Sequence record: ON286972.1
Strand: one strand, 5' to 3'
DNA: 43,765 nt
Of this stretch, positions 5,713-11,400 are shown piece after piece. How positions within the stretch are numbered: position 1 is the stretch's first letter; each line of letters begins with the position of its first letter. The notes beneath the pieces were generated by a model, which made no database searches, had not been told where the DNA came from, and saw nothing but the letters and a program-made list of their open reading frames with translations. The translations under genes and the position numbers were made by a program.

Positions 5713-6137
5713 TGAGAACATACTATAAACTATTACTCGCTCCCTTTTCATTTGGTATTTTATGTCTAATCGACGTATTATGCACAAAGTATTCGATTAG
5801 TACAGTACTTAATCCAGCTTGGTTTACTATTGCTATTGTTGGATACTGCCTGTGTGCGGGTATGGCTGCTCTTATTACGTTACTAACAATTGCAATGGAT
5901 AATGACGAGAAAGATAAAAACAGCTTTGCGAATGACTTTGGGTGGAAAACGATCAGTTCAGTAACTATTGTACCATTTGCATTACTGACAGTTTATTTCA
6001 TTCAAATGGGTGAGATCATTCCTGGTGTTGCATCATCAATACTTTTGTTAATGACAATAGTTGTTCGTTCACGACAAAATTCAATAATCCAAGAGTTTCT
6101 TGAACGAGAGGCAAGGGAAGGAACAAAAACATCTTGA
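5712..6137 (+). CDS. multi-pass membrane protein
   Basis: four hydrophobic segments; same layout as the preceding gene. Confidence 0.75.
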   Translation: MRTYYKLLLAPFSFGILCLIDVLCTKYSISTVLNPAWFTIAIVGYCLCAGMAALITLLTIAMDNDEKDKNSFANDFGWKTISSVTIVPFALLTVYFIQMGEIIPGVASSILLLMTIVVRSRQNSIIQEFLEREAREGTKTS

Positions 6138-6162
6138 CATAAAATGTGTTAAGGGATATAAT
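6134..6162 (+). promoter_or_regulatory. sigma70 promoter
   Basis: TTGACA-17-TATAAT; -35 contains the upstream TGA stop. Confidence 0.85.
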
Positions 6163-6447: not shown

Positions 6448-6485
6448 TTGACAGTACTGAAATATAGGAGTACAATGTACTCCTA
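6448..6485 (+). promoter_or_regulatory. sigma70 promoter with 10-bp inverted repeat over the -10 box
   Basis: TTGACA-17-TACAAT; TAGGAGTACA-A-TGTACTCCTA at 6465-6485. Confidence 0.8.
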
Positions 6486-6516: not shown

Positions 6517-6792
6517 ATGAACTCTATTCTAGTAGCAGTAAACCTGGTTGCTTCTCCGTCTTTTGATTTTAAAAAAGTTATTTCTAATAATCTTAAAAAC
6601 ATTTGCCCTGATACTGAACTTACTTTTTGTGTATTCGATTCTGAAAAAGTTACTAAAGTAGATCTTAATTATCTCATGAACGATGTTAAGAGTGTTCAAG
6701 GTAAAACTAATTTAGATGTAGTACGTTCTGTTGCTGACGACTACGATGATGCTCTGATCATTTCTGAATCTTTTGAAGAGGGTGTACTGTGA
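6517..6792 (+). CDS. hypothetical protein
   Basis: AAGGA RBS. Confidence 0.75.
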   Translation: MNSILVAVNLVASPSFDFKKVISNNLKNICPDTELTFCVFDSEKVTKVDLNYLMNDVKSVQGKTNLDVVRSVADDYDDALIISESFEEGVL

Positions 6793-7256
6793 ATAAATTA
6801 GTTCAATGGGTAGAAAAAACTAAGGTCTATCCACCGTCTGAATTGTTTTTCCAAGCAGACTCTAAGCAAGCCAAGGCAGAAAAACGCGTTGTAGCCATTT
6901 GTGAAGACCTTTATAAACTTGAAGTACATACTCTTAGTGATATGCATACTGCGTTCACAGTGCTTGCCAACGCAGCTAAACGCGATATTCATAACATGAA
7001 GATGAAGTACATTGAAGAACTATGCGGTGTGCTTGCATTCCATGTTGAATATTCGGTTAATGCATTAGATGCTATGCATAAGAAAGATCCCATCCTCCAA
7101 GCTTATTACAAAGGATGGTCAGTAAAAGCTAAAGAGCTAAAGGATGAAATCAAAGCATTACTTATTGAATCATTCCCTGATATTGATAAGGCAATGTTAC
7201 TTTCGGAGATGCAGTACTATTATGATTCTGAAAAAGATAAGGTACTTTCTAAGTAA
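6789..7256 (+). CDS. hypothetical protein
   Basis: GTGA coupling, GAGG RBS. Confidence 0.75.
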   Translation: MNKLVQWVEKTKVYPPSELFFQADSKQAKAEKRVVAICEDLYKLEVHTLSDMHTAFTVLANAAKRDIHNMKMKYIEELCGVLAFHVEYSVNALDAMHKKDPILQAYYKGWSVKAKELKDEIKALLIESFPDIDKAMLLSEMQYYYDSEKDKVLSK

Positions 7257-7653
7257 ACTAATTCTAAGTAAGCCCAAAGTACAAATACAAGCTCAAGAGG
7301 CTTTTGATATATACGAGGCATTGAATAATTGTAATTATGATTTACTCAATAAGCATTGTAGATCCAAAGTAGCTGTTGATTTGATATGTGAACAAATGGC
7401 AGTTAGTAACTTTTCAAAAAATTACAACATTCACTATTTTGGATTTGATGGTTCACCTACAAAATTTGATTATAATTATGCTTATGCAGAATTGGTTAAG
7501 AGTAAGGAAAACATCAAAATAACTGAATTCATTGCCTTGTATTTTTTCACAAAACTTGGTATAGTAACTGGATGTAAAGATCCCTTCCCATTTGATAAGG
7601 TATTGAAAGGAAGAGAACTTGATATATATTCCGCATTCTTAGATAAGGTGTAG
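7222..7653 (+). CDS. hypothetical protein
   Basis: ORF; internal ATG 7222 preferred over 7144. Confidence 0.6.
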   Translation: MILKKIRYFLSKLILSKPKVQIQAQEAFDIYEALNNCNYDLLNKHCRSKVAVDLICEQMAVSNFSKNYNIHYFGFDGSPTKFDYNYAYAELVKSKENIKITEFIALYFFTKLGIVTGCKDPFPFDKVLKGRELDIYSAFLDKV

Positions 7654-7654
7654 A

Positions 7655-8152
7655 ATGACTACAGTATATGTTGACAAGCGTGTTGGATTATTGCTCACTG
7701 ATTCACGAGTAACAACCACTACTGAGAGGTACTTTCTCGGATTATTCCCGTTAAAACCAAAAAAACAATATGGTGTAGTTACTCAAAAATCATTATACAT
7801 TCATGATCGTCTGTTTAGTGCCGCAGGTTCAGTGAATGAAATCAATAAAGTCTTGATGTATTTGATATATGGTGATATAGTACTGCCCAGTAGAAAAGAG
7901 AACTGCCATTGTGTCTTGTTGTCCAAAGATTATTGTATTCACTTAGGAACAAAGAACGGGAAGTTTTTTAAGTACCTTGAGTTCATGCATGAGGAATATG
8001 TGTTCTTCATGGGGAGTGGTGGAGAGTACATGGTTGATGCTGCTGTGCATGAGAACCAAGACACACTACTTCAAAAAATATTCAGTACTTTCAAAGAGGT
8101 AAAAAACCACGATGAATATACTGACGACAATATTAATGTATACCAATTTTGA
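7655..8152 (+). CDS. Ntn-hydrolase / HslV-proteasome-beta-like protein
   Basis: M-T-T start, DSRVT, AAGS, MGSGG, HDEYT motifs. Confidence 0.65.
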   Translation: MTTVYVDKRVGLLLTDSRVTTTTERYFLGLFPLKPKKQYGVVTQKSLYIHDRLFSAAGSVNEINKVLMYLIYGDIVLPSRKENCHCVLLSKDYCIHLGTKNGKFFKYLEFMHEEYVFFMGSGGEYMVDAAVHENQDTLLQKIFSTFKEVKNHDEYTDDNINVYQF

Positions 8153-8173
8153 TTTTTTCATTAGGAGAAGTAA

Positions 8174-9136
8174 GTGAAGAAACTAGACTTAAACGCAATT
8201 TCCGAAGAAGTACTGGATGAATGTTTTGCGAATGAAGAAGTCAATCCATTGGAAGCAATTGAACCATCAGAAGTTATTGAAGATGATATTCCACATAAAG
8301 TTCGTAGTAAAAGTAACATTAGTCTCAAGCGTCCAGTAGGTGTGACTAATGAATCCATCATCGAAGAGATTCGTGCTGGAATTAATGTAAAAAAGAACAC
8401 TGACCTATTACTTCGTTATAACTATGGTATGATCGTTGATGTTGCTTCAAAGTGTACATGTTATATTCCGTTTGAAGATAAAATTGCATATGGTGTAGAA
8501 GGTTTTATGCGAGCACTTAAAACCTTTGATCTTAGTAAGAATGTCAAATTCATTACATATGCAACAACGTCCGTTTATATGACTATGTATAATGAAAGTT
8601 CAGATGCAAATTACATGGTGTACTTACCACGTTATATGAGCGTTCATAACATCCAAGTACGTCGATTTAATGAATCATATCAACGTGAACACGGTAAGCG
8701 ACCTACACCAGAATTAATCTCTGAGAGTACTGGTATCGAGCTTCAGCACGTTAAGAACTGTTTGTTATACCAGAATGCATATACGACTCTTGATGCACAA
8801 CTGGGTTCAGATTCAGACGGAACCCTTGGGGATATTCTGAGTTCATCTGCTCGTGATTATAACCTTAATGTTGATAGCATTTGTAATCCATTACGTTATG
8901 CAATCACAGAAATCATTGACGAATTGAGTACTAAAGAACGAGAAATTATCATGCGTGTTCATGGTCTTGGGGATTACAAAGCAGAAACCCTTCGTGAAAT
9001 TTCTGATAATGGATATGTTGATGATAAAGGAAACATTGTTAAGTCCCGTTCATCTGTGCACCGAAAATATAGTGAAGCTATTCAAAAGCTTAAAAAAATA
9101 GTACTTGAAAAAGGGTACGAATACGAAGATTTCTAA
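8174..9136 (+). CDS. RNA polymerase sigma70-family factor (divergent)
   Basis: regions 2 (EGFMRALKTFDLSKNVKFITYAT), 3 (GKRPTPELIS..TLDAQLGSDSDGTLGD) and 4 (LSTKEREIIMRVHGL..ETLREI) align with RpoD-type order. Confidence 0.9.
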   Translation: MKKLDLNAISEEVLDECFANEEVNPLEAIEPSEVIEDDIPHKVRSKSNISLKRPVGVTNESIIEEIRAGINVKKNTDLLLRYNYGMIVDVASKCTCYIPFEDKIAYGVEGFMRALKTFDLSKNVKFITYATTSVYMTMYNESSDANYMVYLPRYMSVHNIQVRRFNESYQREHGKRPTPELISESTGIELQHVKNCLLYQNAYTTLDAQLGSDSDGTLGDILSSSARDYNLNVDSICNPLRYAITEIIDELSTKEREIIMRVHGLGDYKAETLREISDNGYVDDKGNIVKSRSSVHRKYSEAIQKLKKIVLEKGYEYEDF

Positions 9137-9137
9137 A

Positions 9138-9170
9138 GAAAAAGGGTTGACTTAGGTCAGCCCTTTTTTT
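9138..9170 (+). terminator. GGGTTGAC/GTCAGCCC hairpin element (copy 1, no -10 box)
   Basis: AAAAAGGGTTGAC-TTAG-GTCAGCCCTTTTTTT. Confidence 0.85.
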
Positions 9171-9179
9171 ATGGGACAA

Positions 9180-9680
9180 AATGGATGTTCATGATACAAT
9201 GATATTGTACAATTCTGTTGGCATGGATGACATGAACCTGATCCACTCGAAAATGTAGAGGGCAGTTGAGCAGTCCAGCAGTGCGAAGTGCAGAAGAAAC
9301 CCGTCAGATGTGGGCATATTATGAACCCCTCACGGCAATGCGGCACTATAAAGAACCACGTTAGGATGGCTGGTGGTTCCTCGATAGACATATAAGGATA
9401 ACACCTTACGAATTATCTAAGGGAGAGTTATCAAATTTTGTACAGGAAAGTTGCGTCCAAAATTTGAGTACTCACATTAAGTATTTGATTGCATAGATAC
9501 TTAATGAAGATACACTATGTTTAAAAGTGTAGACCGTCATATGAAACTGAAGTAGAGAGAAACAGGATGACCCGCTTTCGTACTCATTAAGAGTAATCTT
9601 CAATGCAATAGCTCTGATACCATCAGCGTCAAATTCCCCTCCCAGCGGGGGGAAGAAAAATCCCTTCCTCAAATCCCGTC
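9180..9680. ncRNA. candidate structured noncoding RNA or hairpin-rich cis element
   Basis: no credible ORF, higher GC than flanks, at least 7 stem-loops; TGnTACAAT at 9192-9200. Confidence 0.35.
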
Positions 9681-9694
9681 AATATTAAAAGTCC

Positions 9695-9723
9695 TTGACA
9701 GTTATTAATCATTCGCGTAGAAT
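9695..9723 (+). promoter_or_regulatory. sigma70 promoter
   Basis: TTGACA-17-TAGAAT. Confidence 0.8.
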
Positions 9724-9787
9724 ACGTAGTATTAGAAGCGAACAGACATCTCGAAGAGATGGATGACTAACTATTAAGGAACATTCA

Positions 9788-9997
9788 ATGAATACTACAA
9801 TCTTTTTAATTGTTGCTCTTTCAATGCAATCCGGTGTACAAATTACCCCTATGAATTCATTAAACCAATGTTTTTCTGTACGTGATAGTACATACGAACA
9901 AGTAAACAAAAATTCTTGGATGACAGTTAGTGAAGAACAAATGTGGTGTTACAAAAGTGATATTAAAGCGAAATTTATTGTAGGACAAACTCAATGA
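9788..9997 (+). CDS. small secreted two-Cys protein
   Basis: hydrophobic N-terminus, AAGGA RBS. Confidence 0.7.
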   Translation: MNTTIFLIVALSMQSGVQITPMNSLNQCFSVRDSTYEQVNKNSWMTVSEEQMWCYKSDIKAKFIVGQTQ

Positions 9998-10218: not shown

Positions 10219-10482
10219 ATGAGTACTATCAATGCATTCAAGCACTTAGACAAAGGTATCAAACACTTTGATGTTGAATGTTTAAATTCAGGTATGAATC
10301 GTTTAGTACAAATTTACATGAAATCGTTTATAGGTATTGACAGTGCACGACTACCAGTATATAATTACTTTATTGAAAGCGTAGAAGGTGAATCACTTCG
10401 TGATTATGGTGAAAGATTTAATAAGAAAGTTTTCACTGCAATAGCAAATGAGATTCATTACTATAAACCCTATGTAATTTAA
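10219..10482 (+). CDS. hypothetical protein
   Basis: GAGGA RBS before ATG 10219. Confidence 0.7.
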   Translation: MSTINAFKHLDKGIKHFDVECLNSGMNRLVQIYMKSFIGIDSARLPVYNYFIESVEGESLRDYGERFNKKVFTAIANEIHYYKPYVI

Positions 10483-11121: not shown

Positions 11122-11400
11122 ATGTCTTTTACCAAAGAAGAACGTGACCTTATTAAAAAAGCAATCTGGTTTTATGCTAATGAAGGGGAGTGCGATGAAG
11201 AAAAAGCACGTGAACTGTGTAATATCCTTGAGCAGAAACAAGAACTGAAAGTTTATCGTATCCGTGTTTTGGATGACGGGGATCGTATTGTCCTAGCTGA
11301 AACAAAAGAAGAAGCAGAACAAATCTTCACTGATAAAAACGAAAATCCACATTGGATGGAAGAAGTCTGTGAAGTAAAAAAAGGTACTTATATCGATTGA
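11122..11400 (+). CDS. hypothetical protein
   Basis: AGGA RBS. Confidence 0.75.
   Translation: MSFTKEERDLIKKAIWFYANEGECDEEKARELCNILEQKQELKVYRIRVLDDGDRIVLAETKEEAEQIFTDKNENPHWMEEVCEVKKGTYID

What the first reader, a model, noticed from the sequence alone, without database searches (positions are those of the whole stretch)
8174..9136. Phage sigma70-family factor with altered promoter-recognition residues
Seen: region 2.3-2.4 reads TYATTSVYMTM where RpoD has TYATWWIRQAI, so the Trp pair and Gln used for -10 melting and recognition are lost. The region 4.2 recognition helix reads SRSSVHRKYSEA (RpoD: TRERIRQIEAKA), with an insertion in the HTH turn (DNGYVDDKGNIVK). The N-terminus is acidic. Inference: either a sigma with new promoter specificity or a decoy that occupies core RNAP or anti-sigma factors. 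The phage otherwise relies on consensus sigma70 promoters and a TAAATA late motif.
Basis: partly seen in the sequence, partly recalled or inferred. Interest (0 to 1): 0.7.

Follow-up and report, generated by a model that had tools for sequence, protein, structure and literature searches.

The report
Jumbo-phage middle-gene sigma factor
This gene of the jumbo coliphage A4 is a real but divergent sigma-70-family factor, already annotated as such, that most likely steers the host RNA polymerase to about 25 phage "middle" promoters carrying an unusual -35 box (TGGGACA).

Summary
The window is the right end of Escherichia phage A4 (ON286972.1, 355 kb, Rak2-like jumbo phage). ORF 8174-9136 is A4_181, annotated as a sigma-70 family factor. 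The Trp-Trp pair is absent. The HTH turn carries an 8-residue beta-hairpin insert. The recognition helix reads S-R-S-S-V-H-R-K-Y. The N-terminus is acidic.

Sequence and fold searches place it firmly among sigma factors. The -11A pocket residues and the core-binding helix pattern are kept, so a decoy role is unsupported.

A PWM finds 25 copies, all on the + strand, against 0-1 expected. They precede replication genes, nucleotide-metabolism genes and the gp55-like late-sigma gene. One copy sits at window 9173-9200.

In relatives the -10 stays constant but the -35 box differs by lineage, in step with helix residues 292, 293 and 296. PA5oct lacks this sigma and uses TTGACA at the same genes.

Best reading: an early-expressed middle sigma with a new -35 specificity but an ordinary extended -10. 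This is inferred, not shown. It is a member of a known kind and of moderate interest.

The parts
6134..6162 (+). Perfect sigma-70-type promoter (TTGACA-17-TATAAT), the nearest one upstream of the operon that contains the sigma gene. A second 11/12 match lies at 6448-6476.
   Evidence: The genes from 6789 to 9136 are tightly packed, with a 21-nt gap before the sigma gene.
8163..8170 (+). Shine-Dalgarno sequence AGGAGAAG, upstream of the GTG start at 8174.
8174..9136 (+). CDS A4_181, a 320-aa sigma-70-family factor with sigma2, sigma3 and sigma4 domains.
   Evidence: Pfam r3 2.9e-11; r2 and r4 just below cut-off. PHROG 351 at 2.4e-50. PDB SigA/RpoD/RpoS matches 3e-18 to 1e-13. Foldseek sigmaS/SigA 1.8e-11, probability 1.0.
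8174..8308 (+). Acidic N-terminal extension (aa 1-45), predicted disordered, with the family-conserved motif MKKLDLNxIxEEVLDECF. It has no counterpart in Pfam regions 1.1 or 1.2.
8477..8530 (+). Region 2.2 core-binding helix equivalent, DKIAYGVEGFMRALKTFD. D102, G107, G110 and A114 are conserved family-wide.
8555..8587 (+). Region 2.3-2.4, TYATTSVYMTM. Y129 (=Y430) is kept. The Trp pair is replaced by Thr-Ser, and R436/Q437 by Tyr-Met.
8624..8650 (+). Region 3.0 equivalent, LPRYMSVHN (RpoD: IPVHMIETI). H455 becomes Y and E458 becomes V. P152, S156 and V157 are invariant in the close family.
9005..9043 (+). HTH turn with the 8-residue beta-hairpin insertion, DNGYVDDKGNIVK. D283 and G286 are invariant in the close family.
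9044..9079 (+). Region 4.2 recognition helix, SRSSVHRKYSEA. R292 = R584, S293 = E585, H296 = R588, R297 = Q589.
9137..9172 (+). Intrinsic terminator of the sigma operon. Hairpin GGGTTGAC-TTAG-GTCAGCCC flanked by an A-tract and a U-tract.
   Evidence: RNA fold -24.7 kcal/mol, z = -6.0. It is one of 7 copies of this element in the window.
9173..9200 (+). Middle-class promoter, GGGACA-N13-TGATACAAT. In the orthologous site of 121Q, fEgEco12 and Ecwhy_1 both boxes are conserved while the 13-nt spacer varies freely.
   Evidence: PWM score 31.5 bits..
9207..9690 (+). ORF-free conserved element downstream of that promoter. It is one of four paralogues in the genome, and either a structured RNA or a T4-style origin transcript. 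It is associated with the finding but is not part of the sigma gene.

Best explanation
A4_181 is a functional sigma-70-family factor made early in infection from host-sigma70 promoters. It replaces sigma70 on the E. coli core RNA polymerase and directs it to the phage's middle promoters, consensus T-G-G/A-G-A-C-A, 13 nt, TG(A/C)TATAAT.

These promoters precede the genes for DNA polymerase, SSB, primase, exonuclease, topoisomerase II, polynucleotide kinase and a nudix hydrolase, a tRNA, four conserved non-coding elements, and the gp55-like late sigma. This gives a cascade: sigma70, then A4_181, then the gp55-like factor.

Specificity lies mainly in domain 4. The recognition helix keeps the Arg that reads hexamer position 5 (R292 = R584). 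It has Ser, Ser, His and Arg where sigma70 has Glu585, Arg586, Arg588 and Gln589. A beta-hairpin inserted in the HTH turn may reach the extra conserved T 5' of the hexamer. Domains 2 and 3 still read an ordinary extended -10, using Y129 and the retained -11A pocket but without the Trp wedge.

Shown here: the sigma fold and domain set, the family-wide residue pattern, the existence and statistics of the promoter class, its gene targets, and its lineage-specific -35 variation.

Inferred: core binding, that this protein (and not another factor) reads that class, and the residue-to-base assignments.
For: 1) Sigma identity.. The AF2 domains sigma2 (59-142), sigma3 (153-202) and sigma4 (240-313) have pLDDT 80-90.

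2) No phage RNA polymerase is annotated in A4. It has a separate gp55-like late sigma. Group 2 jumbo phages are described as RNAP-less but sigma-encoding (PMC7824862).

3) The gene sits in an early operon behind perfect TTGACA-N17-TATAAT promoters. This matches the CBB description (PMC5259590).

4) Promoter class. The regex G[GA]GACA-N12-14-TGnTAnAAT gives 16 hits, all on the + strand, against 0.1 expected. A PWM gives 25 hits on + and 0 on -, against 0-1 in Markov controls. The hits lie in front of replication and nucleotide genes and the late-sigma gene.

5) The same architecture and spacing appear at orthologous genes in RaK2, GAP32, Serratia BF, PHA46, EJP2 and CBB (Table S6). TGnTATAAT is invariant but the -35 is lineage-specific. 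A4 and PHA46 have GGGACA, EJP2 has GAGACA, GAP32/BF/CBB have GAAAC(G/A) or GGAAT, and RaK2 has TGAACA. The enterobacterial hosts share one sigma70 (own knowledge), so the drift points to a phage-encoded reader.

6) Covariation. Hexamer position 3 is G wherever residue 296 is His and residue 292 is Arg (A4, PHA46, EJP2). It is A where these are Ser and Lys (GAP32, CBB, BF, Kaldavass/XbC2 helix type). PHA46 sigma is overall closer to GAP32 (46%) than to A4 (37%) yet shares the helix residues and the box with A4. EJP2 was checked after its helix (NRCTIHRRY) led me to expect a G at position 3, and it has GAGACA. In sigma70 the aligned residues R588/E585 and R584 are the genetic determinants of positions -33 and -31 (PMC2613000; PMC12262734).

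7) Natural control. PA5oct-type phages have the helicase but no member of this sigma family. They use TTGACA plus (TGn)TATAAT at the orthologous primase and exonuclease genes.

8) Phylogenetic footprint at window 9173-9200.
Against: There is no experiment on any family member. No transcriptome or core-binding data were found in the literature searched.

The middle promoters are near-consensus for sigma70 itself (nnGACA plus TGnTATAAT), so host holoenzyme could probably use them.

The -10 is invariant while residues aligned with Q437 and H455 differ between lineages. Those positions therefore cannot be the readers, and it is unexplained how a sigma without the Trp wedge melts TATAAT.

The covariation amounts to about one clean evolutionary event (the GAP32 clade) plus RaK2. 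RaK2 does not fit the simple His296-to-G rule: it has His296 but TGAACA, in two registers.

Any other diverging phage protein would also show lineage-specific residues.

Pfam r2 and r4 and the NCBIfam models score below their curated cut-offs.
Confidence: 0.55

Rival explanations
1. Host sigma70 reads the middle promoters through their perfect extended -10. The TGGGACA box would be the site of a separate phage DNA-binding activator, as in T4 MotA/AsiA sigma appropriation, or of a timing repressor. A4_181 would then have some other, unidentified target set.
For: TGnTATAAT is exactly the sigma70 extended -10. Such promoters need no -35 contact (PMC2613000). In GAP32 and CBB an HTH protein is encoded two genes upstream of the sigma gene. 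A4_181 lacks W433, W434, Q437, H455 and E458.
Against: No other unexplained promoter class was found for A4_181 to read. The box sits at the canonical -35 distance and keeps the GACA/AC core that sigma domain 4 reads. Its lineage variation tracks residues 292 and 296 of the sigma helix. No AsiA or MotA is annotated. PA5oct, which lacks this sigma, also lacks the box.
Confidence: 0.22
2. A4_181 reads the other abundant non-canonical class at the left genome end, AAAAAGTACTTGCA-N16/17-GTATAAT-TTTACATC. There are about 22 tandem modules at record positions 6-24.5 kb, outside the window.
For: The -35 region is highly uniform and differs from TTGACA. The modules are interleaved with TTGACA promoters.
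Against: The uniformity extends through the spacer and 5' UTR, as expected of recently duplicated modules. TTGCA with an A-rich UP-like tract is a plausible strong sigma70 promoter (own knowledge of T4 and T5 early promoters). Covariation with the sigma could not be tested because relatives' left ends were not fetched.
Confidence: 0.08
3. Decoy or competitor. The protein occupies core RNAP, or titrates a host anti-sigma or regulator, without promoter-specific initiation.
For: The Trp wedge is lost, the HTH carries an insertion, and the N-terminus is acidic.
Against: The putative DNA-contact residues are the best conserved parts of domain 4 (S293, H296, R297, Y299). Region 3.0 and the -11A pocket residues are also conserved down to 25% identity. 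That pattern is not expected for a pure decoy.
Confidence: 0.05

Closest known systems
Bacterial group 1/2 sigma factors (E. coli RpoD and RpoS, SigA)
   Same: These are the best sequence and fold matches. The domain order sigma2-sigma3-sigma4 is the same. The region 2.2 pattern, FxTYA, N383 and R584 are retained.
   Different: There is no region 1.2 or non-conserved region (no PF00140 hit). The Trp-Trp pair is absent. H455 and E458 are changed. The HTH turn has an 8-residue beta-hairpin. E585, R586, R588 and Q589 are replaced. The N-terminus is a phage-specific acidic segment. All curated equivalog cut-offs are missed by a wide margin.
Bacillus phage SPO1 gp28 (phage-encoded middle sigma; own knowledge, and PMC13401047 listed)
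   Same: It works the same way: an early phage protein of the sigma-70 family that replaces the host primary sigma on host core RNAP and turns on middle genes, followed by a further phage late factor.
   Different: No detectable close sequence relationship was tested or seen. SPO1 middle promoters differ from host promoters in both elements, whereas here the -10 is the host consensus and only the -35 is new.
T4 MotA/AsiA sigma appropriation at middle promoters (own knowledge; PMC7824862)
   Same: The promoter logic is the same: a host-type -10 (TATAAT) combined with a phage-specific upstream box. The gene class is the same (replication genes). T4 origins oriF and oriG also use such promoters.
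   Different: T4 remodels host sigma70 and adds a separate DNA-binding activator. Here a complete phage sigma is available and no AsiA-like gene was detected (a weak test).
T4 gp55 late sigma
   Same: It is a phage-encoded specificity subunit for host RNAP. A4 has its own homologue, A4_588 (PHROG 12791 at 1e-151, PHROG 234 at 3e-17), with ATAAATA late motifs.
   Different: gp55 is a minimal, region-2-only factor. A4_181 has regions 2, 3 and 4 and is a different gene.
'RpoD-like' sigma of group 2 jumbo phages (Iyer et al. 2021, PMC7824862; CBB_513, GAP32_490, 121Q gp167)
   Same: A4_181 is a member of exactly this family, at 33-74% identity. Its early-region location is as described for CBB.
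   Different: Nothing differs at the family level. The papers read here neither characterise the family experimentally nor link it to the TGAAACG/TGGGACA promoter class that the CBB paper reported.

Membership tests
Sigma-70 family (superfamily level) | Sigma2 domain with a region 2.2 core-binding helix and region 2.3-2.4. | tested here: met
   phmmer against PDB SigA/RpoD gives 3e-18 over aa 74-278. Foldseek probability is 1.0. Pfam r2 scores 23.4 bits against a cut-off of 24, marginally below. The D102/G107/G110/A114 pattern is conserved.
Sigma-70 family (superfamily level) | Sigma3 domain. | tested here: met
   Pfam Sigma70_r3 scores 43.7 bits against a cut-off of 25.3, E = 2.9e-11.
Sigma-70 family (superfamily level) | Sigma4 domain with a helix-turn-helix that reads the -35. 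| tested here: inconclusive
   Pfam r4 scores only 17.8 bits (cut-off 24.1) and the match stops at the insertion (aa 248-278). AF2 shows both HTH helices with a hairpin between them at pLDDT about 85. The alignment to RpoD 4.2 is unambiguous. DNA binding was not tested.
Sigma-70 family (superfamily level) | Binds core RNA polymerase and confers promoter-specific initiation. | not testable with these tools
   This needs reconstitution and in vitro transcription.
Group 1/2 (RpoD/RpoS-type) sigma, as several GenBank records name it | Region 1.2 present, and curated RpoD/RpoS equivalog score reached. | tested here: not met
   There is no PF00140 hit. TIGR02393 scores 92.8 against 354, RpoS 71.8 against 378.7, and RpoD models 60-63 against 555-572.
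Group 1/2 (RpoD/RpoS-type) sigma | Conserved aromatic melting residues, including the W433/W434 pair, and the Q437/T440 -12 readers. | tested here: not met
   A4 has T132/S133, M136 and Y139. The whole family lacks the Trp pair.
Rak2-like (group 2 jumbo phage) sigma family | Full-length homology, including the conserved N-terminal MKKLDL..EEVLDECF motif and the HTH insert G(Y/F)xDxxG(K/N). | tested here: met
   Homologues score 1e-206 to 1e-49. There are 17 representatives below 1e-30 before the family merges into general sigma factors. The 76 phage records with a match are, among named phages, all jumbo phages of Enterobacterales or Xanthomonas; 5 are unnamed short human-faecal contigs at about 25% identity.
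T4-type sigma appropriation (MotA/AsiA), considered as the alternative mechanism | An AsiA-like anti-sigma and a MotA-like activator are encoded. | tested here: inconclusive
   tblastn of T4 AsiA (sequence from memory) against the A4 genome gave no hit with E < 1. None is annotated. MotA was not searched. Small divergent proteins could be missed.

The most novel reading that the evidence does not exclude
The sigma is the dedicated reader of a middle regulon. Besides replication genes and the late sigma, that regulon includes four ultraconserved, structured, ORF-free elements spread round the genome, one of them directly behind the sigma gene. If these act like T4 oriF/oriG (middle-promoter transcripts that prime replication through R-loops), or as a new class of large phage RNAs, then this sigma would couple the transcription switch to replication initiation in RNAP-less jumbo phages. 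The lineage-specific sigma and -35 pairs would also be natural orthogonal sigma/promoter sets that work on E. coli core polymerase without the Trp wedge.
Probability: 0.15. Interest if true: 0.7.

Novelty: new member of a known kind. Interest (0 to 1): 0.4.

Why it matters
Jumbo phages of the Rak2 group have no RNA polymerase of their own. How they time about 600 genes is known only from motif guesses.

Pairing this sigma family with a defined promoter class gives a concrete, testable three-step cascade: sigma70, then the phage sigma, then the gp55-like factor. It also explains why the class's -35 box differs between phage genera. It points to two or three helix residues (292, 293, 296, equivalent to R584, E585, R588) as natural specificity switches. 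These are the same positions that sigma70 genetics and recent redesign work target.

It would also show that a sigma can use a canonical TATAAT without the conserved Trp pair.

As it stands the gene itself is ordinary and already annotated. The added value is the promoter link and the conserved non-coding elements found next to it.

Tried and rejected
1) The CBB-type box TGAAACG was searched in A4 and is not enriched in intergenic DNA (45 hits, 2 intergenic). The A4 equivalent turned out to be TGGGACA.

2) Rfam at gathering threshold on the whole window, and at E <= 1 on 9100-9850, gave nothing credible.

3) The second 'sigma-70 family' CDS, A4_187 (window 11122-11400, 92 aa), has no Pfam hit and only a PHROG of unknown function, so the annotation is unsupported. 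'Putative sigma 54' A4_529 is a ribosome-hibernation/S30EA-like protein.

4) Neighbours of the sigma gene gave no Pfam hits and only PHROGs of unknown function, so no cofactor clue. The exception is an HNH-endonuclease C-terminal fragment at 10219-10482.

5) The reported absence of the sigma in phage Ecwhy_1 (PMC13070987) would have argued against an essential role. The ORF is intact in MH791411 and is merely annotated as a misc_feature.

6) Cumulative GC skew, run to test the origin idea for the four non-coding elements, only mirrors gene orientation.

7) The RaK2 paper has no promoter or sigma text. The PA5oct paper reports only TTGAC/TATAATA motifs.

8) tblastn with AsiA gave no hit. This is a weak negative.
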